DNA of 63,889 bases, taken from Vitrella brassicaformis CCMP3155 (lineage: Eukaryota > Protista > Chromerida). The first letter of the stretch is position 1, and each line of letters starts with the position of its first letter. The stretch spans positions 62,001 to 125,889 of the forward strand of contig CDMY01000176.1 in assembly GCA_001179505.1 (NCBI GenBank). Reading direction: 5' to 3'. The translations under genes and the position numbers were made by a program. The notes under the pieces were generated by a model. The model did no database searches, was not told the origin of the DNA, and saw only the letters and a list, made by a program, of their open reading frames with translations. Shown here piece by piece: positions 2,968 through 54,860 of this stretch.

Positions 2968-3019
2968 TTTGCTGTTCTTCTCGCCGCAGATAGCTCGCAG
3001 GGTAGCCTAGGGTACTGCC

Positions 3020-3029
3020 TGAAACCGCT
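3020..3029 (+). promoter_or_regulatory. Candidate promoter element TGAAACCGCT (copy 1)
   Basis: Lies in the divergent gap between ATG 2967(-) and ATG 3162(+). Shares the 14-mer CCTGAAACCGCTGC with the copy at 48603-48616. Confidence 0.5.
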
Positions 3030-3161
3030 GCAGCCACGGCTCCTTTGAGGAGAAAGCGGGGCTTGAGGATGGTCAGAGCGACGAGCATTCCATCGACGAC
3101 CCCCCCATTCCCCAGATCTGCGTCCTCGCCGCATCTCTCAGCGAGCATATCACGCCGAACC

Positions 3162-43200: not shown

Positions 43201-45127
43201 AACGCCACGCGGAGCCAAAAACGCGGAGAAACGGTGCAGCTGTAAGCGGGATGAGGGCAAATGAACCGATTGGCTGCGAATCAAGAAATTGTCCATTTGC
43301 TTCTCTCCGTCTCCCGGAGACGATCCCGAATTCTCGCCAATAATTAATTGAGAAATTTACAGAATGGAGAGGCTGCGAGGGTTGGCCAGCCGCTGCCTCC
43401 CTCGTGCCAGCCCCACCCTCAGCAATTGGCTGTGTGTCTCAGCACATGCAGGCAATGCGCCTGCCGGGACGAAAGGTGGAATGCCCCCACACTTTTGCAA
43501 TGGTGTATGCCCGGAGGCGTGGGGGTGGACATTTATACACCATGACACGGAGGTTTGGCCATTTTATACGTCCGTTGCCTTCGGTGATGAGCCACAGGCT
43601 GGGGATCCCCCGAATGCCACAGCACCACACGATGGATACTGTGGGAGACACCTAGAGACACGAGGAAACACCCGCTGCGTGTGTGGCCATAGACGGCTGC
43701 ACAATTGCGGCTGCATCTACTACCTCAAGCTGGTTCAGTGTTTTGCCAGCGACTTGACGACCGTCTGATGAGTCTGTAGTCTGCAATGTGGGGAGGGACG
43801 CATCTCACTACATGTGGAGTGAGGTGCCTTCCTCTTTACAGCAAGGCTGGACAACTCGGAAGCTGTCGCAAGTAGAGGAACGGTACTCTCTTACTCCATG
43901 GCTTATGAGTGGTAAGAGTTTCGGTGCCATTGATGAGTCGCATGAAGAAGTCTGTCACATGGGTGAGCTCTATCAAGTTCTCCTTCGTGAAGGCCATGGT
44001 GACATCAAGAACGCCTACAGTCGCGGCGCTCCCTGCTGCTCACGAGAAAGAGGGGCGGGAACACGACAACGAACGGCTCTAGTCTGTGGCTGTGCACACA
44101 CAGGGCAGGCCAACAGACAGGAATGCGCACAGGAACTTGCTCCCGAGGGCGTGAAGTGACGTGCGTGGCATCATACCCGTCGCAGATGCGTAGCGGAGTC
44201 AGCGCCTGGGACCCACCCCTCTTGCCGTAGGACCCCCGCAGATGGAACGGGGTTTGGCCCTTGCTGCGGGCCTCGAGGCGGAGGAAGGTCTCGTCGGTGG
44301 TGATGGAGTCCATCTTGATGAAGAAGAAGGTGGGCTTCTTGTAGTAGGGGATGTGACGGATCTTTTCACGGATCCTGTCGATGTCTAGCGGTCTCTGGGG
44401 CCTTGGACGCTTCAGGAAGTGTGCGACCCAGGAAGCGATCAAGTTCTCGTACGTCATGGTGCCCTCGACAACGCCGACAGAGGTCTCAGACGGCTTCCTG
44501 CCTCTCACGAGTAGAGGGCGGGGGCAGACGACAACGGATGCGTCTACTCTGTGGCGGTCCTCCTCCCGTGATGACATCAGGGGGAAATCCAAAGAGGGAA
44601 AGGCAGAGAAACAATTGCGTCCCGGCAGATGCAAATGGGCATGGCGAGATGGAGAGGCAGCTCGAGGACGAACGAAAGAAGAATATGGCGGTCAGCCGCA
44701 TCCATGCAGGCAGCCCCAAGGCCGATGCAGCCAACGAAACGTGTGCCTCAGGCAACGCTCCTGCTGGACCGAAAGATGCAATGTCCCACACTTTTGCAAT
44801 GATGTATGCCAAAAGGGGGGGTTGAACATTTTGGCAGAGAAACGGCAGAGAAACGATGACGTCCTGGGTGAAAGGAGATGGAATGGCAGAATCTGTTGGT
44901 TGTCCGTAGAGCACTGCATTCTCTTGCTGCCGGCTGTCTGAAGAAACGGTTTCTTTTTTTTAAAGAATCGTCCCATTTTCTCGCGTGAGGAAAGGGATTT
45001 CTCGACACAACAAAAATTTACAGAAAGGACAGGAGACAGGAGGGGATCGTACTCATCGCTTTCCCACTCTGCCTTCCCCCTCCGTGCCCCTTGTGGCCCG
45101 GCAGACGCAAATGGGCATGCCGCGATG

Positions 45128-46229
45128 GAGGGGTAGCTCGAGGACGAACGAAAGAAAATATGGCGGGTCGTCGGACCCGCTGGCCCCGCATCGCAGGCAG
45201 CCCGAAGGCTGATGCAGCCCAAGACACGTGTGCCTCAGGCAAAGCTCCTGCTGGACCGAAAGATGCAATGTCCCCACACTTTTGCAATGATAGACGCTAA
45301 GAGGGGGGGATATATGCCAAGAGGGAACGGGGGGGGGATGAACACATTTTATACGCCACAACGCGAAGGCTCGACCATTTTATACGGCCCTTGCCTCAGT
45401 CATATGAGGCGCAGCGGCTGATGATCCCCCGAATTCCACAGCACCACACAACGGGTACTGGGAGACACGAGACAACACACCCGCTTCATGTATGGCCATA
45501 GACGGCTGCATCCACTCCCTCAATGTATGCCAAGAGGGAANNNNNNNNNNNNNNNNNNNNNNNNNNNNNNNNNNNNNNNNNNNNNNNNNNNNNNNNNNNN
45601 NNNNNNNNNNNNNNNNNNNNNNNNNNNNNNNNNNNNNNNNNNNNNNNNNNNNNNNNNNNNNNNNNNNNNNNNNNNNNNNNNNNNNNNNNNNNNNNNNNNN
45701 NNNNNNNNNNNNNNNNNNNNNNNNNNNNNNNNNNNNNNNNNNNNNNNNNNNNNNNNNNNNNNNNNNNNNNNNNNNNNNNNNNNNNNNNNNNNNNNNNNNN
45801 NNNNNNNNNNNNNNNNNNNNNNNNNNNNNNNNNNNNNNNNGAGGGGTAGCTCGAGGACGAACGAAAGAAAATATGGCGGGTCGTCGGACCCGCTGGCCCC
45901 GCATCGCAGGCAGCCCGAAGGCTGATGCAGCCCAAGACACGTGTGCCTCAGGCAAAGCTCCTGCTGGACCGAAAGATGCAATGTCCCCACACTTTTGCAA
46001 TGATAGACGCTAAGAGGGGGGGATATATGCCAAGAGGGAACGGGGGGGGGATGAACACATTTTATACGCCACAACGCGAAGGCTCGACCATTTTATACGG
46101 CCCTTGCCTCAGTCATATGAGGCGCAGCGGCTGATGATCCCCCGAATTCCACAGCACCACACAACGGGTACTGGGAGACACGAGACAACACACCCGCTTC
46201 ATGTATGGCCATAGACGGCTGCATCCACT
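45128..46229 (+). repeat. Identical 389-bp copies (45128-45516 and 45841-46229) flanking an assembly gap
   Basis: Direct sequence comparison, offset 713 bp. Confidence 0.9.
45541..45840. other. Assembly gap (300 N)
   Basis: N run. Confidence 1.
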
Positions 46230-46529
46230 GCCTCAAGCTGGTTCAGTGTTTTGCCAGCGACTTGACGACCGCCTGATGAGTCTGTAGTCTGCAATGTGGG
46301 GGCGGAGTCGCCTCCCTCACCACAGGTGGAGTGACGTGTGACCTCCCCCATAGCACGGCTGGACAACTCGGAAGCTGTCGCAAGTAGAGGAAGTGCACTT
46401 TTTTAAGTGCATTGTGCGTGGCAAGGGTTTCGGTGCCATTGGTGAGTCGCATGAATAAGTCTGTCACATGGGTGAGCTCTATCAACATGAGCGTCTGCTG
46501 ATACATCCTTTCAAGTTGCGCATTCGCTG

Positions 46530-46969
46530 CCCCAGACTGGTTCATCCGCTGCCGTTGAGTCATGAGCCGTCAACCAGTCAAAAAGCTCGGCCGCTTGACA
46601 GTTCGGAAGCTGTCGCAAGCAGCGACACTATCAGTACAGACTGCACACACCAAACCGAAGAGATAGTTGAGTTTAGGGGCGTCCCGAGCGTGTGGACACG
46701 GGCATTTCAGCAGAGCATCTTGCTCTCCTCTCCGGGCCTCTTGTCTCGGCCCCAGACTGGTTCATCCGCTGCCGTTGAGTCATGAGCCGTCAACCAGTCA
46801 AAAAGCTCGGCCGCTTGACAGTTCGGAAGCTGTCGCAAGCAGCGACACTATCAGTACAGACTGCACACACCAAACCGAAGAGATAGTTGAGTTTAGGGGC
46901 GTCCCGAGCGTGTGGACACGGGCATTTCAGCAGAGCATCTTGCTCTCCTCTCCGGGCCTCTTGTCTCGG
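46530..46969 (+). repeat. Exact tandem duplication of 220 bp
   Basis: 46530-46749 = 46750-46969 (CCCCAGACTGGTTCATCC...GGGCCTCTTGTCTCGG). Confidence 0.92.
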
Positions 46970-47426
46970 GTGGGATCCCCTGTGACCAACAGCATCCGCC
47001 TAGACGGGCTATTGCAGACCGGGGTGCCATGCAGCAGCCTGGGCTGCGAGCTGCCGTAGCCTCTCGCCGATGCTGACAAGCCGTGATTCTGGTCACGCTT
47101 TTCAAATTGCCTTGCCGACGAGTAGTCGCTAAGCTCCGCCAGATGCGACTCTTGCTCAGTTGCCCTCTGCTGCCCGGCTGGCCGTTGAAGTATGAGCGGA
47201 CTATCAATACGAATATACACTGCTCCAGCTGCATGCATAGCTGGTCACAGCTCGGTTTGTGTGCCAAGCTGGTCATGAGCGCCCGCCCATTTCATAAATG
47301 ACATTGGTTGGTTGGTCGTATGACAGTTATCTGTGTGTGCGTCTGTGTGGGTGGGTGGGTGGGTGGGTGTGTGGGTGTGGTTGGTTTGTTTAGTAGGTGC
47401 CTTCATTACCGTTGAATGAGTCTGTT

Positions 47427-48552
47427 TCATGGATGAGCCATCCGTAAGGTCGAATTGCTACGATTAAGACACTCCAGCAGTCTACCGTCTTTTACACACT
47501 CTACCGTGTCCTGGTTCTCCCACAAATATACCAGCACCGTAAGATAACAATAGACAACCAGCGCCAAGCAAACAGAGGCCACGTCATGTCGAGCGAGTAG
47601 AATCAACTGTTGCAGCAGCTCGGCAGCAGCCGAACAGACAAACGACGGAATGAAAAGACCGCAGAAGATGTCTGCCTGAAGACACACGCCATGTGCCTTC
47701 TCGTCCGGTGTCCCTCCTTGTCTGGCTTGCAGCTCACCTTGAATGGCTTGCCTCTCTTCAAGAGCGAGAATGCCCAGCTCGTCCACAACCCCTCACACCT
47801 CTCTCTGAAGGTCAGGACATCATCAACGAGCCGAAGAGCTGCCTGCTTGTCCTGCGCGATGATGTCCTACATCTCCGCGGGCCGTGGCAGACCCACGAGA
47901 GGGACAAGGCCGAAGAGAGTGAATGACGATGAAGCACACGGCAATGGCGACCAGCGTCGCCTCCCTGTTTCTTGCTCCACTCTCGGAAGCTCTTCTATCA
48001 GCCGCTCGTCTTCGCAAGGCGAACCTTCATTGGTTGGTTTCAATGCCCTTTTGTCAGCTCTGCCGGTTCTTCAGCGGTGTTGCCACCCGACTGCAGCTGT
48101 TAGCGGTTGCTTCCTGCGAGGGCGGGCTGACGAACAAGGGGGCGGGCCTTTGGTGGGAGATCCGGTCTTGTTGCAGACGGTCTGCTGAGATGCTACTGCA
48201 TACCAAGCTGCCGCGCCTTCTCGAGATCTTCCATAAAGCAGCCTCTTGTGCAACATGCCCTCGATGGCTGACCGCTTTGGTCCTTTCGCCGATGTCGACA
48301 AGATCGGCCAGCTGTGGCTCTTGGACAGCCGACCTCTGCTTCACCCGCCGCTGAAGGCGTCAATGAGGGAGCCGACTCATTAGTGAGCATGGCTATGAAG
48401 AGCACCTTGCAAAAAACAGCATCTGGCAGAGAGTCATCACGGTGAGAAGCTGAGTACGACGCTGTCGAGACGATTCTTGAAGCCACCGCCTTTTTGCGAG
48501 CTTGCAAGCCCAGCGCTGGCTGGACAGTGTTTGTGGGTGCCTGGTTGTTCAT
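47427..48552 (-). pseudogene. Decayed gene fragment, unknown family
   Basis: Coding-like patches interrupted by stops, with one plausible intron (PFK|gtgag...ttcag|ADIFCGLFIP). Lies head-to-head with the OTU-HAT1 gene. Confidence 0.3.
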
Positions 48553-48604
48553 GTTTGGGACGGACGACAGAGGGCTTGGCCGTCACGCCGCCTAGGGTGC
48601 TCCC

Positions 48605-48614
48605 TGAAACCGCT
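48605..48614 (+). promoter_or_regulatory. Candidate promoter element TGAAACCGCT (copy 4)
   Basis: Ends about 26 bp upstream of the OTU-HAT1 ATG (48641). Confidence 0.5.
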
Positions 48615-48640
48615 GCTGCAGATCCCCAGCTTTGTGACAA

Positions 48641-51600
48641 ATGGGTAAGACCAAGCACACCCAGAAGAGCAAGGGCCGCCGCAGCCTCAACCGCCGCCGT
48701 CACCCTCTTCCGCACCCAACTTGGGTTCCTCTTTCGCGCCCTGGCACCCAAGTTGGGCGTCTGAGGAGCCATCTGGCGGCCTGTGGCCTCAGGATACGCT
48801 CTGTGAAGGCCGACTGCAACTGCCTGTTCCGGGCATTCGCCGACCAAATCACAGGTGGGCCTCACGGCAGCCGTGTGTCGACACCACAGGGTCAGCTCGT
48901 GTGTATGTGGGTGAGTGCGTCTGTGTGTTTTCAGGTGACCCAGATGAGCACGTTGAGTTTCGTCAGAAGGCTATGGACTACGTCGAGGCACATGCTAGCG
49001 AATTCGAGCCCTTCATGGAGGTGCGTTCTCGGCCGAAGAACACGCACTGCCACTCTGTCACATCAGGCACTGACGCATCGTGTGTGCCGGTTTCTGTCTG
49101 TGTGCTGCCATCCATCATCCCTCAGGATGGTGAGCAGCTCGACGCGTATGTGAGCCGCATGCGCCTGGACAGCGAGTGGGGCGGCCAGCAGGCGCTGCAT
49201 GCGCTCTGCCACCTGTACCAAGTCAACTGCCTGCTCCACAAGAAGGGCGTGGGGACATTGCAGTTGGACTTCTTCTCCAAGGAGTACCCCTGTGTTCAGC
49301 TCTGCCACGACGCAGGTATGATGCATGGCAGGGCAGGGGAGGCAGTGCATCAGGTGGCTGATGCGGTTTTTTGTTTCCTTCCATTTCGGCTGTCTGTGAA
49401 GGTGTCCATTATGATTCCGTGCGTCTGGCGGGCGAGAAAGGCGACGGTCCGCCGAAGAAGCTGACGATGGCCGAGTTGCTCGACTACATGGAGACCCGCG
49501 AGCACCCTGAGAAGGACCCCACCACCAAGACACACAAGGGCGGGGAGGACAGGAACGCCATTGTCAAGGAGAAGCTGTCCAAGCAGACGGCCTCTGACGA
49601 TGATGGGCCGCCGTCCAAGAAGCAGAGGCTCGAGGATCGCGTCAACACCCTTAAGAGCGTGTACTTCCACCCCTGCGAGTCTCTAAAGGACTATTACAAG
49701 CCGCCAGAGACGTTCCAGCCCTCATTCGGCCACCACTTCTTCGACACGGACCAGGCCATCATGGCCGTCGAGGAGGTCGCCCGACACGGGTCCGTCCACA
49801 TCTGCTATATCCCCGACACATTCGACGTGTTCGTGAAGGTGGAGGGCGAGAGCCCGTCCTTCCAGGCCTCCCGCGAGCGCGTCATGGAATGCCTGACCAA
49901 GGTGGACTTCCCGGGCGGCTTCTGCCCTTCAGAGCACGACTTCATCGTCAAGCTCGAGTGCCGGGCGACCCGTGGGTGGCAATTCCAGCCGCCTGGGGAG
50001 CATGTGGGGGTGTTGAGGCCCACGGCGGGTGCGGGGGACGAGCAGATCGAGATCGAGGTCAGACGGTGCACGTTTGACGAGAGCGAGTTCAAGCCGCTGC
50101 ACCGGCGGATGGAGTGGTTCCTGCACTGGTTCATCGAGGGCATGTCGGAGATCGACCAGGACGAGCGCTGGCACGTCTACCTCGCGTACAAGCGGCCCCT
50201 GGCGTCGCCCGGCAGCGTTGTCTACAGGCGCAAGCTGAGACCCCGTGCGTCAAGCGGGCGGCCGGGGTGTCTGAGCCTGTGTGGGTATGTCACCACCTAC
50301 ACATTCTGGAGCCGGTCGATGTTGGGCAGCCGCAGCCGGCTCTCGCAGTTCCTCATCTTCCCGCACTACCATAGAAAAGGTCAGTGCGATGCACTGCACG
50401 CAGACGGGGATGGGAGAGCGGCACTCACTGTGCTGTGCTGTGTGTTGTGTTGTGTTGTGTGTTGTGTGTTGTGTGTGCAGGAATTGGTAGGAAGTTGTAT
50501 CAGCTGATCTATCAGCAGAACCTGGACGATGCCGATGTCAAGGAGGTAACACCAACCCACAGAGCGCAACACCACCACACCATGAGACACGTCTTTCCCC
50601 CTCCCCCTCCCTCCCCGCCCCCTCCCTCTGTGTGTGTGATCCATCCATCCACCAGATGGCTGTCGAAGACCCTGCCCCGGCGTTCGTCCAGCTGCGTGAC
50701 GTGGTGACGGTCAAGGTAGCCATCGATCGCAACGCCGTGTCCCCCCTCGCACTCTACCCCCCACCCCCAGGGGCAGAGGTACCCAGCTCGGCATCAGCGG
50801 CCGTCCCGGCCAGCAGCGGCCTGGGCCTTACCAACGGCCAGTCCCAGCCCGAGCTCCCCCTAGACCGGACGCGCAACCGCACCCGCGCCCTCCACAAAGC
50901 CGTCAACGACGCGGGGGTGTCGAGCGGCGGGATTGGTGCAGCATCGTCGGCAGCCGCAGACGCGTCGGCGAGTGCGGCGTCTGGTGGCATGTCCCGCCGG
51001 AGCCAGAAGCGCCGGCGGAGTGTGGGGGATGGCATGGACATCGACAGCGGTGTGTCGGCGGTGGCTGCCAGGGACGTGGGTATGAGCACCAGGAGCAGGG
51101 CGAGGGGCAGGGATGGCGGCGGGGCCAGTAGCAGTAGTGCAGCAGCAGCAGCAGCAGCCGCCGCTGAGGGTGGTGGTGGTGGGAGCCATCCATCCACGGT
51201 GCAGAAGACGGTGAATCCGGATGCGGGCATCCCGACCATCGACTGCCTCGTCGCCAACCTCAAGGAAACCAAACCTCAAGCCACACGGTCGGTCGACACA
51301 GACACAGACACAGACACCTACCTTTCACACACACTATCCTCCCCTCCCTCCCTGCCTCCTGGCTGCGCATATCGTTGGCTGGCATCTGTCAATCAGGATG
51401 ACGGAGCTGCTGCAGCTCGCCCGTCTGCTACCGCTCGACCTGCCGGAAGAGATCCCGCCGGCCTACCTGGCTCCCGGCACCGCCTACCGCCGTAGTGTCG
51501 AGCAGCGGCTGCGCAAGGACATCAAGGAGCCCCATATCGTCTCGACCGACGAGGTGAGTGAGTGACGGAGGGCGGTCAGCCAGGCAGACAGGCAGACGAG

Positions 51601-52331
51601 CAGGGAGACGGGCAGTTAGGTTGGGAGGAAGGCATTAGTCATGGCCGCCGTAGAACAGTAGCACGGCAGCTGTGTGTGTGGTCACTGTCTGCACTGTTTC
51701 CCCTCTGCTGCTGTGCTGTGTGTTCGAGTAGGAGGATTTCGACTTCTTCAAAGTGTGCCACACTAAACACTCGGTACGGCACACACACCCAGACACACAC
51801 ATACAACACGACACGGCACACGCACACCACGTTCTTACATCGAGAGTAGGAGATGCGATGCGATGCGATGCGTGTAGATATACACACGAACCGTCTATGT
51901 AGAGCGTTTTTGTCGCCCATGCATTCCACCCATCCCATTACATACAGACATGATGGACGGAAGGACAGACAGCCTCAGCTGCTGGGCTCACTCGTCATTG
52001 TGTGGCGCTGTGGGTGGTTGGTGTGTGTGTGTGTGTCGCAGATGGACAAGGCCGCCCTTCAGGACGAGTATGAGAAACTCGTCACGTCTTACTTCAAGTA
52101 TGTCCATCAGACACACGCATGCACACACACACAGACGGGGATGCCACATCTCATCCGTGTGATCTCTGTCCGTTGTGTGATGGGTGCAGGTCCATCGTGA
52201 AGCTGCGCCAGATCTTCCCGCCGCCCCCACACATCAAGGCCGCCGGCAGCAACAAGAAGGCCGCGGCCACTGAGCTCAACGGGGGAGGGCCAGCCGAGAA
52301 CACGCGCAGCAAAAGACGCAAATTGGGCTGA
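48641..52331 (+). CDS. HAT1: Fusion of an OTU-family cysteine deubiquitinase and histone acetyltransferase type B catalytic subunit (HAT1)
   Basis: OTU: VKADCNCLFRAFADQI, RQKAMDYVEAH..EFEPF, WGGQQAL, HYDSV. HAT1: FQPSFGHHFF, LHRRMEWFLHWFIEGMSEIDQDERWHVY, GYVTTYTF, RSRLSQFLIFPHYHRKGIGRKLY, VEDPAPAFVQLRD. The OTU His motif and the HAT1 core lie in one uninterrupted ORF (49371-50507). Confidence 0.88.
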
Positions 52332-54329
52332 TCAAGGAGGGGGAAGACGGCAGTGCAGCGGCGGGCAGGAGGAAGGACAGCTCATCACCTTTGGCAAGGG
52401 GTGGGGGTATGTATCGCTTACGAGAGGGGTGCGTCTCGTGTGAGCTCTCTGGAGTCAGACAGCGACAAGGAAGGGGGGGGACCTCCCCCTGCATGCTCGC
52501 GCGAGCGGCGGGGGTCGGGCCGCATCTTCATCGAGTCAGACGACGACAAGTGACCATAGCACGGGACGGACAGGCATGCGGGCATTTTTAGCATGTCTGA
52601 GTCTGTCTGTTGTTGGGAGGGAGGGAGGGAGGGAGGGAGCGGTATATAGCATATGTGGCATATACATACGTACCAACGTACGTACGTAGGGGCCGCGTCG
52701 TGCCATGCCGTTGCGTCAGTCATCTGCCGTGCCGTGGGCCATGTGTGTCTGTGTGTGAGCGTATGGTGTCGGTTGTGTGTTTTGTGTTAATGAGTGATTG
52801 AGTGCCAAACGGGTGTGAGTGTCCGTCCGGCCGCTATTTGTGGTTAAGGAGAGAGGTGAGTCAAGGTCGTCTGTCCGTCCGTCTGGATGCGTGTATGTAT
52901 GCCTGCCTGTCTGTCCGTCTGGCTGCCCGTTCATTCATCATCCATCCACACTCACTCCATCACTCGATCACTGTATCCACGGCTGGCCAGCAGACCAGTT
53001 GGCTGGCCGGTCGTCTTTCTGTCTGTCTGTCTGTCTGTATGTATACGTCTGGCTGTGTCTGTCGCGACTTCCCCGAGAGCGGTGGGGAAGGTAGCGGCGG
53101 CCCAGCTTGCCTACCTGCCTAACGCTGACTCACTCAATGAATGACTTACTGACGTGACGACTTTTTCAGTCTGGTGGAACGGCATGGCATGGCGTGGCAT
53201 GGCATGGCTCCAAGTATTTCCAATCCGCCGTTGTGAGCCTTGCCCGTGTGTCGGCCGCCACGCCAGCCCTTTCTGTCTGTGAGCGGGCGGGCCGTTGCGA
53301 TGATGCGGGAAGGGCCACAGCGCACCTACTGACAGCCACACGGGGGCAGTTTTTTGTCCCATGCTCTCGGTGCGTCCAACGAACACTCCCCCTGTTTGCA
53401 CATCACATTCATGTGTTGGTTTACGCATGGCATGTGCGGGGGGACTCACGCACCATCGAAAGAGCAGAGCAGAGGAAGAGCGCTTGTTCGTTCCAACTCT
53501 TTTAAGCGGGGGGCAGGGCAGGGCAGGGCAGGGCAGGGCTGGCGGGAGAGGGAGAGGGGCGGGGCGGGGAGGGGTGTTGAGGGGCGTCAATGGTTGCATT
53601 GCGTACCTGCATACGTGTGCATGGTTGGGTGAGTGAGAGTGAGGTAATTGATGTGATGTATCGGTGGCTGGCTGGACTCTTGATTGAGAGAGAGAGATGA
53701 TTGAGAGAGAGATGATGTGCCTTTTAAGAAAGCTGATAGCTAGCGTGTATGTGATATATAGGACAATTTGTTCATTCGAGCTAGCCAACGAGCTAGCTAG
53801 ATAGACAGATCAGACACCGAACTGAGACCGACAGCGTGCGTGCTTGTCTCTCCTGATTAATGGCATGCCCAGCCCAGCCGAGTGTCTTGCCTTTTTGTGC
53901 GGCCCGTCCGTCCGTCCGATGACCTGACTGACCTGACAGTTTAGGTGTGCGATGAGTAGATAGATAGTGTACGTACTTGTGCACTGACCCGCAGAGCAGG
54001 TGTGCATGTCGCGCATGTGTGTGTGTGTGTGTGTGTGATGTGTGTGTTTGACAGGTAGCTAGAGAGAGGCAACCGGTAGTGAGTGCGTCACTTGACGCAG
54101 CAACTTGACGTGCAATGATTGTGTGAGTGAGTGGGTGAGTGGATGGATGAGTGCCTTCAGCCCATGCATATTGAATGGTAGGCAGACCGCACACACACAC
54201 ACGACACACGGATGCACACTTACACACACACATGATGGCACACGGCTTTGATTCCTGTGCATCGTCTGTTGGTGTGTCACAGGTTGCGCGGCTCACCGGA
54301 CAGACCAAATCATATGAGTGTGGAGGGTG

Positions 54330-54860
54330 TGTAGGACGAGCCACATCGAGTTTTCAAATCACTGGGCGGCCGACAACGACTGGATGAACACGGTGTCCGT
54401 TCTTCGGCTGGAGGCCCTCATCAACCAGCTGCTGGAGACCACCGGTACGAATGCCTGTACTCAAAGACACACACATCGCTGGAACCAACCCATGCCGAGT
54501 TCTAATCTCTTATATGCTATGCCTGCCGAGCAGAGAAGGAGAAGCAGAAGGACGTCAAGAAGAAGACGGGCAAGGAGGGCGAGCGTGAGCAGAGAGAGGG
54601 GAAGCACTGTCATGTGTGTGAATGGTACGGATCTGTGTATGTGAATGATGTGTTGCTGTGGATATCAGGGGCGTCGAGCGTGTGGGATAGGGTGGAGCCG
54701 CCAATGGCTGAGGGGCCGTCGCTGGGCCAAGGTAAACCCCCATTCACACGGCAGGGGGCAGAGAGAGGCGACTGACATCCATCCATCTGTGTGCATGTGA
54801 CCTTCGTGGTTCTCTGTCCTTTCTGTCCCTTCAGGAGGTGTCAGGGTGTCAAAGCGCCAG
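54330..54860 (+). repeat. Inverted, degenerate paralogous copy of the 41730-42320 segment
   Basis: HIEFSNHWAADNDWMNTVSVLRLEALINQLLE versus CIEFLNQWAADND...WMNKVPVPRLEALINQLLE. Flanking intron-like sequence (CATCCATCCATCTGTG...CATGTGACCTTCGTGG) also matches in reverse complement. Confidence 0.8.

What the first reader, a model, noticed from the sequence alone, without database searches (positions are those of the whole stretch)
48641..52331. OTU deubiquitinase fused in frame to HAT1 histone acetyltransferase
The OTU catalytic Cys (ADCNCLFRA, a D-C-N-C variant of DGNC) and His (HYDSV) are intact, as is the HAT1 acetyl-CoA motif (SQFLIFPHYHRKGIG). The exon starting at 49402 begins with GVHYDSV and runs without a stop into the HAT1 core, so the fusion does not depend on guessing an intron between the domains. 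Yeast, human and plant HAT1 have no deubiquitinase domain, and I know of no OTU-HAT1 fusion. It would couple removal of ubiquitin to acetylation of new histones (H4K5/K12) or of other substrates in one enzyme, echoing the DUB+HAT pairing of SAGA. A basic N-terminus and C-terminal SKRRKL suggest nuclear localisation.
Basis: partly seen in the sequence, partly recalled or inferred. Interest (0 to 1): 0.82.

Follow-up and report, generated by a model that had tools for sequence, protein, structure and literature searches.

The report
Young OTU–HAT1 chimeric gene in Vitrella
One alga (Vitrella brassicaformis) carries an intact gene joining a ubiquitin-removing enzyme domain to a histone acetyltransferase, but the join is a recent copy-and-paste accident between two of its own genes, with no sign yet that the combination is used or selected.

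Summary
Window 48641-52331 (+) is a 10-exon, all GT..AG gene. Its 853-aa product is identical to the deposited Vitrella brassicaformis protein CEL93542.1 / A0A0G4EDS1.

The protein has a complete OTUD3-type OTU domain (Cys61, His166, Asp168). It also has a complete HAT1 (Hat1_N, an RKGIG acetyl-CoA loop, Glu409, Glu515/Asp516). The OTU His and the HAT1 N-domain lie in one uninterrupted exon.

The origin can be traced. About 1 kb of the 5' end of the standalone OTU gene CEM20843, with its three introns (90% DNA identity), was pasted onto the start codon of one member of a Vitrella-specific HAT1 family of at least four loci. The junction is at 49603-49605 (ATG microhomology), and the old HAT1 ATG is now out of frame.

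Among the HAT1 and OTU relatives recovered from two very large protein collections, only this protein and its neighbour paralog CEL93524 combine OTU and Hat1_N. No paper mentions either.

Since duplication, the OTU part has changed almost neutrally (dN/dS 0.53 pairwise; substitutions by codon position 12/11/15; about 9 of 10 polarisable changes fall on the fusion copy, including DGNC to DCNC). No RNA evidence could be obtained.

Verdict: a real, young, lineage-specific chimeric gene. The proposed DUB-HAT coupling is possible but unsupported.

The parts
48641..52331 (+). Whole coding region of the chimeric gene (CEL93542.1, 853 aa). Exons: 48641-48854, 48935-49020, 49126-49315, 49402-50379, 50481-50545, 50656-51287, 51397-51553, 51732-51773, 52042-52097, 52190-52331 (stop included).
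   Evidence: Model built, all GT..AG. Identical to P0001. Pfam finds OTU + Hat1_N.
48641..49605 (+). Segment copied from the standalone OTU gene CEM20843: start codon, exons 1-3, introns 1-3 and the first 204 nt of exon 4. It encodes aa 1-231, comprising a basic N-terminus, the OTU fold (aa ~35-180) and a linker.
   Evidence: blastn: 48762-49608 matches L001 4125-4989 at 90% identity, introns included. The first 36 nt of the CDS are 83% identical to the parent. The OTU part resembles human OTUD3 (4bou) at E 3e-21. An AF2 model has TM 0.90 and rmsd 1.3 A to 4bou.
48812..48823 (+). OTU Cys loop D58-C59-N60-C61. The catalytic Cys61 codon is at 48821-48823. C59 replaces the Gly of the DGNC consensus.
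   Evidence: Sequence. Alignment A2 shows G in the parent and all outgroups.
49407..49415 (+). OTU His166-Tyr167-Asp168 (HYD) at the start of exon 4.
   Evidence: Aligned to HYDSV of human OTUD3.
49603..49605 (+). Recombination junction. This ATG is shared by donor and recipient and is the former HAT1 start codon. It is now +1 out of frame and opens only a 27-codon dead-end frame. The protein junction is D231/G232.
   Evidence: Three-way comparison with L001, L003 and L004.
49606..52331 (+). HAT1-paralog body (aa 232-853): Hat1_N, a GNAT core (E409 at 50136-50138; R488-K489-G490-I491-G492 across 50373-50379/50481-50487; E515/D516 at 50665-50670), and C-terminal helices ending in SKRRKLG.
   Evidence: 80-84% DNA identity to paralog loci L003 and L004, introns included. 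Aligns with human HAT1 2p0w at E 7e-21, with E187, E276 and D277 equivalents conserved.
50743..51267 (+). About 175-aa low-complexity (Ala/Ser/Gly/Arg-rich) insertion between the HAT1 core and its C-terminal helices. It is shared with the Vitrella paralogs and is absent from human HAT1.
   Evidence: Alignment A1. No Pfam hit. dS to L003 is only 0.067 here, which suggests gene conversion.
47020..48481 (+). Upstream flank shared with the other HAT1 paralog loci. This is the presumed family promoter region, lying upstream of the inserted OTU segment.
   Evidence: blastn to L003 1574-3306 (83-86%) and L004 3117-3667.
48587..48621 (+). Short high-copy element 20 nt upstream of the ATG, ending in GCTGCAG. 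Its role is unknown.
   Evidence: Summed contig depth is about 6200 against about 60 in the flanks, with loose ends on both sides. A second copy lies at 3003-3035.

Best explanation
This is a young, Vitrella-specific chimeric gene.

How it arose. A genomic copy of roughly 1 kb was taken from the 5' end of the alga's standalone OTUD3-like deubiquitinase gene (CEM20843). The copy held its ATG, exons 1-3 with their introns, and the first part of exon 4. It was joined by a 3-nt (ATG) microhomology to the start codon of one member of a recently expanded HAT1 family. The join, together with a net 4-nt loss just after the old ATG, puts the OTU frame in register with the HAT1 frame and destroys the HAT1 start.

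How it probably works (inferred). Transcription starts in the HAT1-family upstream region, or in the inserted piece, and runs through the OTU segment. The three inherited introns are spliced, and translation from 48641 gives an 853-aa two-domain protein.
- The HAT1 half has everything a type-B histone acetyltransferase needs: the Hat1_N domain, the RKGIG acetyl-CoA loop, and Glu409 plus Glu515/Asp516 at the positions of human E187, E276 and D277. It probably acetylates lysines as the other paralogs do.
- The OTU half has a complete fold and a Cys61/His166/Asp168 triad, so it could cleave ubiquitin. However, it lost the parent's C-terminal 360 residues and has drifted nearly neutrally since the copy was made.

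My odds:
- Real chimera in the genome: 0.95.
- Made as one fused mRNA and protein: about 0.55.
- OTU half catalytically active: about 0.5.
- DUB-HAT coupling under selection: about 0.15.
For: Shown:
- The gene model is identical to the deposited protein.
- Both domains score above the Pfam cut-offs.
- The OTU fold model matches OTUD3 4bou with TM 0.90.
- HAT1 catalytic and acetyl-CoA residues align with 2p0w.
- Donor homology is 90% over 847 nt including introns.
- Recipient homology to two paralog loci covers both flanks.
- The junction and the out-of-frame old ATG are visible in the three-way comparison.
- The junction is covered by error-free contigs in 3 DNA runs from 2 studies.
- The four Vitrella HAT1 paralogs are monophyletic (100/100) inside apicomplexan-type HAT1.
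- Only P0001 and P0003 carry OTU + Hat1_N among the relatives found.

Frame maintenance:
- All 6 indels between donor and copy lie in introns (32% of sites), none in exons.
- All GT..AG sites are kept.
- No stops occur in 502-567 aligned HAT1 codons. HAT1-lineage omega is 0.58 (19.5 synonymous / 35.5 non-synonymous changes; about p 0.05 against neutrality by my own chi-square on those counts).

The donor gene is expressed: its intronless mRNA contig is L002.
Against: - No RNA evidence for this gene. The runs served were DNA, since their contigs keep the introns.
- The exact protein is on record only from the genome.
- No transcript-derived protein overlaps aa 60-330 or 140-270, although other paralogs and the donor do have transcript-derived entries.
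- The OTU half looks unconstrained. dN/dS to the parent is 0.53, and substitutions by codon position are 12/11/15.
- Exon divergence is 0.066 against 0.097 in introns. That is close to what one neutral plus one constrained copy would give.
- About 9 of 10 polarisable amino-acid changes fall on this copy, several at positions conserved in outgroups (G59C, D103G, Q139K, Y161H).
- The sister 'fusion' CEL93524 carries a frameshift. This shows that the family tolerates broken or junk-bearing copies.
Confidence: 0.75

Rival explanations
1. Selected bifunctional enzyme. The OTU domain is an active deubiquitinase that works together with the HAT1 domain on histones or on new H3-H4 cargo, and the fusion is kept because the coupling is useful.
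For: - Both catalytic sets are intact and the OTU fold is complete.
- The frame and the splice sites are kept, with all 6 indels in introns.
- A second HAT1 paralog has independently picked up a different, OTUD5-like OTU at another position.
Against: - The substitution pattern in the OTU half is near neutral, and the changes are concentrated on this copy.
- The Gly of the Cys loop is replaced.
- The second fusion sits in a frameshifted copy.
- There are no orthologous fusions anywhere else and no expression evidence.
- With only about 5% divergence per lineage, keeping an open frame is expected by chance about one time in three (my estimate from the counts).
Confidence: 0.15
2. Non-functional by-product. 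This is a chimeric paralog in a birth-and-death gene family that is not expressed, or is on its way to becoming a pseudogene. The open frame merely reflects its youth.
For: - Family-wide omega is 0.4-0.7, with dN>dS tracts.
- The neighbour paralog is frameshifted, and a 206-aa fragment copy, CEL92986, exists.
- No transcript-derived protein matches this copy.
- The OTU part evolves neutrally.
Against: - There is no stop or frameshift in 853 codons.
- All HAT1 catalytic residues are kept, whereas the expressed paralog CEL92990 has lost the Asp (VERPAP).
- HAT1-lineage omega of 0.58 is marginally below 1.
- The terminal branch (0.30) is not longer than those of the other paralogs.
Confidence: 0.3
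3. A HAT1-only product. Transcription or translation starts inside exon 4 (Met186 or Met193, 'MAELLDYMET'). The OTU exons would then be a separate short transcript or an untranslated leader.
For: In-frame Mets exist 39-46 codons before the junction. The linker is disordered in the model (pLDDT below 50 from aa 195).
Against: - The family's upstream region lies 5' of the OTU segment, so read-through is the simple expectation.
- Those Mets are donor-derived linker residues, not a former start.
- The ancestral HAT1 ATG is out of frame.
- The next Met inside HAT1 (aa 284) would cut into Hat1_N, which Pfam places from aa 259.
Confidence: 0.1
4. An artefact: an assembly chimera between the OTU gene and a HAT1 paralog, or an over-merged gene model.
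For: Both parents have close paralogs (87-93% identity), which could mislead an assembler. The annotation of the sister locus does hide a frameshift.
Against: - Contigs from three DNA runs in two studies span 49523-49857 with zero differences. They carry the copy-specific variants on the OTU side.
- Depth is single-copy across the gene.
- The join lies inside one exon, so no intron call is needed.
Confidence: 0.03

Closest known systems
Human OTUD3 / yeast Otu2-type OTU deubiquitinases (MEROPS C85); direct parent: Vitrella CEM20843 (A0A0G4FZ95)
   Same: - The OTU fold is complete, with TM 0.90 to 4bou.
- It has the Cys loop, the HYD motif and the DQ..GD..H..R motif.
- The basic N-terminal tail is the parent's.
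- aa 42-231 are 87% identical to the parent, and the three introns sit at the same positions.
   Different: - It lacks everything after the parent's residue ~232, about 360 aa.
- Cys replaces Gly in DGNC.
- Further derived changes sit at conserved positions.
- It is attached to an acetyltransferase, which no other OTU among the relatives searched is, apart from the paralog CEL93524.
HAT1/KAT1 type-B histone acetyltransferase (human 2p0w, yeast 1bob); nearest relatives are apicomplexan HAT1s (Rhytidocystis, Toxoplasma-group, Eimeria, Plasmodium)
   Same: It has the Hat1_N domain, a GNAT core with an R-K-G-I-G acetyl-CoA loop, equivalents of human E187, E276 and D277, and the C-terminal helical region.
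   Different: - It is one of at least 4 recent Vitrella paralogs rather than a single conserved gene.
- It has a ~175-aa low-complexity insertion after the core.
- Its own start codon is replaced by a 231-aa OTU module.
- Constraint is relaxed (omega about 0.6).
Vitrella paralog CEL93524 (A0A0G4ED89), 57 kb upstream on the same contig (scan note s1-231175)
   Same: It belongs to the same HAT1 family and also combines Hat1_N with an OTU domain. It is the only other such protein found.
   Different: - Its OTU is of another type (27% identical, OTUD5-like).
- The OTU is inserted after the low-complexity region as about 8 mini-exons, not at the N-terminus.
- Its Hat1 domain carries a +1 frameshift that the annotation skips with a 103-nt 'intron'.
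SAGA complex (Gcn5 HAT module + Ubp8/USP22 DUB module)
   Same: It brings an acetyltransferase and a deubiquitinase together in one physical unit. This is an analogy only.
   Different: In SAGA the two are separate polypeptides of other families (GCN5-type GNAT, USP protease), in an ancient, conserved complex with a shown function. Here there is one polypeptide, other families, a recent origin and no functional data.
Young chimeric genes made by DNA-level duplication and exon shuffling (for example Drosophila jingwei-type new genes; comparison recalled from general knowledge, not tested here)
   Same: A duplicated 5' gene fragment is recruited in frame by a second gene. Both parents are still present and identifiable, and evolution after the event is rapid or relaxed.
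   Different: The donor copy keeps its introns, so this is a genomic event and not a retrocopy. The join is a 3-nt microhomology exactly at the recipient's ATG.

Membership tests
OTU cysteine protease (Pfam PF02338, OTUD3-like) | Profile match above the curated cut-off | tested here: met
   52.9 bits against 23.3, aa 57-151. OTUD3 4bou at E 3e-21.
OTU cysteine protease (Pfam PF02338, OTUD3-like) | Catalytic Cys in the D-G-N-C-L-F-R loop | tested here: met
   Cys61 is present and aligned. The loop reads D-C-N-C, with Gly replaced by Cys only in this copy. The effect on activity is unknown.
OTU cysteine protease (Pfam PF02338, OTUD3-like) | Catalytic His followed two residues later by an acidic residue (H-x-D) | tested here: met
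   His166-Tyr167-Asp168 align to HYD of 4bou.
OTU cysteine protease (Pfam PF02338, OTUD3-like) | Complete OTU fold | tested here: met
   In the AF2 model, aa 35-180 have pLDDT 80-96. The best PDB match is 4bou, with target-normalised TM 0.90 and rmsd 1.3 A.
OTU cysteine protease (Pfam PF02338, OTUD3-like) | Isopeptidase activity on ubiquitin | not testable with these tools
   This needs Ub-AMC or di-ubiquitin assays.
OTU cysteine protease (Pfam PF02338, OTUD3-like) | Purifying selection on the domain, as expected of a working member | tested here: not met
   Pairwise dN/dS is 0.53, and substitutions by codon position are 12/11/15. About 9 of 10 polarised changes fall on this copy. Power is low because the copy is young.
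HAT1 / KAT1 type-B histone acetyltransferase | Hat1_N domain above the curated cut-off | tested here: met
   50.6 bits against 22.9, aa 259-409.
HAT1 / KAT1 type-B histone acetyltransferase | GNAT core with a Q/R-x-x-G-x-G/A acetyl-CoA loop | tested here: met
   R488-K489-G490-I491-G492 align to Q-G-Q-G-H-G of 2p0w. There is a weak Acetyltransf_10 hit.
HAT1 / KAT1 type-B histone acetyltransferase | Catalytic acidic residues (human E187, E276, D277; numbering from my knowledge of the human enzyme) | tested here: met
   E409 in WFIEG, and E515-D516 in VEDPAP, sit at the aligned positions.
HAT1 / KAT1 type-B histone acetyltransferase | Groups with HAT1 of related organisms | tested here: met
   It falls in a 100/100 clade with three other Vitrella HAT1s, inside the apicomplexan HAT1 group.
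HAT1 / KAT1 type-B histone acetyltransferase | H4 K5/K12 acetylation; partnership with an RbAp46/Hat2-type subunit | not testable with these tools
   This needs biochemical assays and pull-downs.
Conserved OTU-HAT1 domain architecture (a 'family' of fusions) | The same architecture in other species | tested here: not met
   Of 142 HAT1 relatives found among 1.84 billion representatives, only P0001 and P0003, both from Vitrella, hold an OTU. The same holds for the 25 hits of the word-based search, judged by their precomputed Pfam domains.

The most novel reading that the evidence does not exclude
The fusion protein is made, and both halves are active. On this reading, Vitrella's expanded HAT1 family has twice independently recruited OTU deubiquitinase modules (OTUD3-like at the N-terminus here, OTUD5-like internally in CEL93524). 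It did so because joining ubiquitin removal to acetylation in one polypeptide is advantageous, for example by self-protection from ubiquitin-dependent turnover or by editing ubiquitinated histone cargo. That would be a single-chain analogue of the HAT + DUB logic of SAGA, caught at birth.
Probability: 0.12. Interest if true: 0.7.

Novelty: new variant of a known kind. Interest (0 to 1): 0.36.

Why it matters
If the fusion protein is made and active, it would be the first single polypeptide known to me that joins a deubiquitinase to a histone acetyltransferase. It would give a natural test of what such coupling does.

Even if it is not, the locus is an unusually clean record of how a new multi-domain gene is born. 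Both parent genes are still present. The donor copy keeps its introns, and the breakpoint can be read to the nucleotide (ATG microhomology at the recipient's start codon). The substitution pattern shows the new module drifting while the frame is still open.

The finding also shows that HAT1 is a recently expanded, fast-evolving family in Vitrella, whereas its apicomplexan relatives recovered here appear as one HAT1 each. Automatic annotation also hides defects in that family.

Tried and rejected
- RNA evidence. The look-up of sequencing runs (kind rna) returned only runs whose contigs keep the introns, so they are DNA. One presumed RNA run of the species label held 4% of the words. The exact look-up of P0001 found only the genome record. 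Word searches with aa 60-330 and aa 140-270 found no high-identity fragment. This is weak negative evidence only.\n- PDB search with exon 3 alone gave spurious summed hits to TAL-effector repeats, which I discarded. The spliced OTU domain gave OTUD3 cleanly.\n- NCBIfam gave nothing. That library targets prokaryotes.\n- Literature. There were no hits for OTU + HAT1 fusion, Vitrella + HAT1, Vitrella + deubiquitinase, the accession numbers, or chromerid + gene fusion.\n- Retrocopy origin of the OTU module: rejected, because the three introns were copied too.\n- A transposon-mediated capture: no terminal repeats or target duplications were seen at 48482 or 49605. The only repeat is a 35-nt high-copy element at 48587-48621, whose role I could not establish. 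A spliced-leader link found no support in papers.\n- An older, conserved 'canonical' Vitrella HAT1 outside this family: none appeared among the hits.\n- I did not search for the donor of the OTU in CEL93524. A donor would show that copy is young too, but not whether its model is real.
Full report
**What is there**

Window 48641-52331 (+) holds a 10-exon gene. Every intron is GT..AG, and the model translates to 853 aa. The translation is identical to a deposited protein of Vitrella brassicaformis CCMP3155: CEL93542.1 / UniProt A0A0G4EDS1, auto-named 'histone acetyltransferase', on contig CDMY01000176.1. An earlier scan note (s1-227001) had named the organism, and one search confirms it.

Pfam on the whole protein gives two domains:
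- OTU, aa 57-151: 52.9 bits against a cut-off of 23.3.
- Hat1_N, aa 259-409: 50.6 bits against a cut-off of 22.9.

The separate exons hit consecutive parts of the OTU profile. Exon 4 (49402-50379) is one open frame. It starts with (G)VHYDSV, the OTU His motif, and runs through a linker into the HAT1 N-domain and GNAT core.

**The two halves**

The spliced OTU domain is closest to human OTUD3 (4bou, E 3e-21; OTUD5 and OTUD1 are weaker).
- An AlphaFold model built on alignment A2 is confident for aa 35-180.
- Its best PDB match is 4bou, with target-normalised TM 0.90 and rmsd 1.3 A.
- Cys61 (48821-48823), His166 and Asp168 (49407-49415) are in place.

The HAT1 half aligns with human HAT1 2p0w (E 7e-21) from the N-domain to the end of the core.
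- Glu409 sits at the position of human E187.
- R488-K489-G490-I491-G492 sit at the acetyl-CoA loop.
- Glu515/Asp516 sit at the positions of E276/D277. The human numbering comes from my knowledge of the enzyme and was checked against the construct offset in the alignment.

A low-complexity insertion of about 175 aa follows (aa 541-715). After it come C-terminal helices that end in SKRRKLG.

**Where it came from**

The representative search with exon 4 found several very similar Vitrella proteins. Their loci explain the gene.

1. The donor.
   - Window 48762-49608 is 90% identical, over 847 nt and through all three introns, to the 5' part of the standalone OTU gene CEM20843 (P0011; locus L001 4125-4989).
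   - The first 36 nt of the coding sequence are also homologous.
   - That parent is expressed: an intronless contig of run SRR646408 encodes it exactly (L002).
   - After residue ~232 the parent continues with about 360 aa that the window's gene lacks.
2. The recipient.
   - Window 49607-52286 matches the loci of HAT1 paralogs at 80-86% identity. The flanks 44600-48113 and 53286-54678 match them as well.
   - The paralogs are CEL93524 (L003; same contig, about 57 kb away, inverted) and CEM11299 (L004).
3. The junction.
   - The two homologies meet at 49603-49605, an ATG present in both donor and recipient.
   - It is the recipient's former start codon: MGEPSSKKQRLE in L003, MEEPSQKK in L004.
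   - In the window it is one base out of frame and opens only a 27-codon dead end.
   - A net 4-nt shortening just behind it brings the OTU frame into the HAT1 frame. The protein junction is D231/G232.

The fusion is thus a DNA-level copy-and-paste and not a retrocopy. Contigs of three public DNA runs in two studies cover 49523-49857 with no difference and carry the copy-specific variants. Depth is single-copy across the gene. This makes an assembly chimera unlikely.

**How widespread**

A tree places the four full-length Vitrella HAT1 paralogs in one clade (100/100), on a long stem inside the apicomplexan-type HAT1 group. The window's terminal branch (0.30) is similar to the others (0.18-0.45).

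Evidence on the OTU + Hat1_N combination:
- Of the 142 relatives found among 1.84 billion representative proteins, only P0001 and P0003 contain an OTU.
- The word-based search, judged by its precomputed Pfam domains, gives the same answer.
- HAT1s with long N-terminal extensions from other organisms have no OTU.
- No paper in the searchable library mentions such a fusion or these accessions.

The absence claim reaches only as far as these searches. The query is divergent, and only 142 HAT1 relatives passed E 0.001.

**Is it used?**

Expression could not be tested.
- The exact protein is on record only from the genome.
- No transcript-derived protein overlaps aa 60-330 or 140-270.
- By contrast, the donor and at least one other paralog have transcript-derived entries. 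CEL92990 is matched by the JGI contig protein P0170, and P0004 is a further UniProt-only partial paralog.

Sequence evolution gives a mixed picture. For the OTU part against its parent:

| Measure | Value |
|---|---|
| dS | 0.105 |
| dN | 0.056 |
| omega | 0.53 |
| Substitutions by codon position | 12 / 11 / 15 |
| Exon divergence | 0.066 |
| Intron divergence | 0.097 |

These values are about what one constrained copy plus one freely drifting copy would give.

I polarised the amino-acid differences by eye against outgroup OTUs in alignment A2. About nine fall on the fusion copy and one on the parent, and several hit conserved positions: G59C in DGNC, D103G, Q139K, Y161H. That is roughly p 0.01 by my own Tajima-type chi-square.

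On the other side, all six indels between the copies lie in introns (32% of sites) and none in exons. All splice sites are kept.

For the HAT1 part:
- There is no stop in more than 500 aligned codons.
- Lineage-specific omega is 0.58. My chi-square on the counts gives about p 0.05 against neutrality.
- Synonymous divergence is mosaic, 0.06 to 0.33, which points to gene conversion among the paralogs.

At roughly 5% divergence per lineage, an open OTU frame is expected by chance about one time in three (my estimate). Intactness alone is therefore weak evidence.

**The second 'fusion'**

- It carries a different, OTUD5-like OTU, 27% identical to this one.
- That OTU is inserted as about eight mini-exons after the low-complexity region.
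- Its Hat1 domain has a +1 frameshift, which the annotation skips with a 103-nt 'intron'. This removes the conserved EWFLHWFI segment.

Two independent OTU captures could hint at selection for the pairing. Because the second sits in a damaged copy, I read the pair as a sign of a turbulent, duplication-prone family.

**Verdict**

The fusion is real in the genome and intact. It is unique to Vitrella among the relatives I could search, and no paper in the searched library describes it. However, it is already deposited, it is young, and its OTU half shows no detectable constraint. The coupling of deubiquitination with histone acetylation is an open possibility, which I put at about 0.15, and not a finding.

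I class it as a new variant of known kinds: a new domain architecture built from two well-known enzyme families. I score it moderate to low, mainly as a very clean example of new-gene origin. The deciding experiment is simple: look for spliced reads or cDNA across 48641-50500.

Noticed in passing
window 48587-48621 and 3003-3035: A ~35-nt element (GCCTAGGGTGCTCCCTGAAACCGCTGCTGCAG) lies 20 nt upstream of the fusion gene's ATG. It is high-copy in Vitrella DNA runs: summed contig depth is about 6200 against about 60 in the flanks, and many contigs diverge on both sides. A second copy in the window also ends in GCTGCAG and lies about 35 nt before an ATG (3069). It could be a core-promoter/TSS motif, a conserved splice-acceptor region or a tiny mobile element.
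   Followed up: partly
L003 4500-4670 (contig CDMY01000176.1, about 57 kb upstream of the gene, inverted): Paralog CEL93524 has a +1 frameshift inside the Hat1 domain. The deposited model hides it behind a 103-nt 'intron' (L003 4532-4634) that deletes the conserved EWFLHWFI segment. It is likely a pseudogene or an assembly error.
   Followed up: partly
L003 5930-7147: An OTUD5-like OTU segment is inserted into CEL93524 as about 8 mini-exons with canonical splice sites. Similar short peptides flank it (…PRID / …PSID). Its donor gene was not sought.
   Followed up: no
P0165 / P0170 (CEL92990, contig of 184,768 bp); P0006 (CEL92986), same contig: A further HAT1 paralog of 401 aa ends after the low-complexity region and reads VERPAP where the catalytic VEDPAP should be. 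It is nevertheless expressed, since an intronless 1,946-nt JGI contig encodes it. A 206-aa fragment copy lies four genes away.
   Followed up: partly
window 50380-51190 against L003 and L004: Divergence among the HAT1 paralogs is mosaic. Intron 50546-50655 is 99% identical to L003 and dS is about 0.06 in the core and insert, against dS of about 0.33 in the N-domain. This suggests recent gene conversion and produces local dN/dS above 1.
   Followed up: partly
window 44600-47400: Tandemly repeated blocks of about 0.3-0.7 kb lie upstream of the gene. They are shared at about 82% identity with L003 800-1900, so the segmental duplication carrying the HAT1 paralogs is at least 10 kb long.
   Followed up: no
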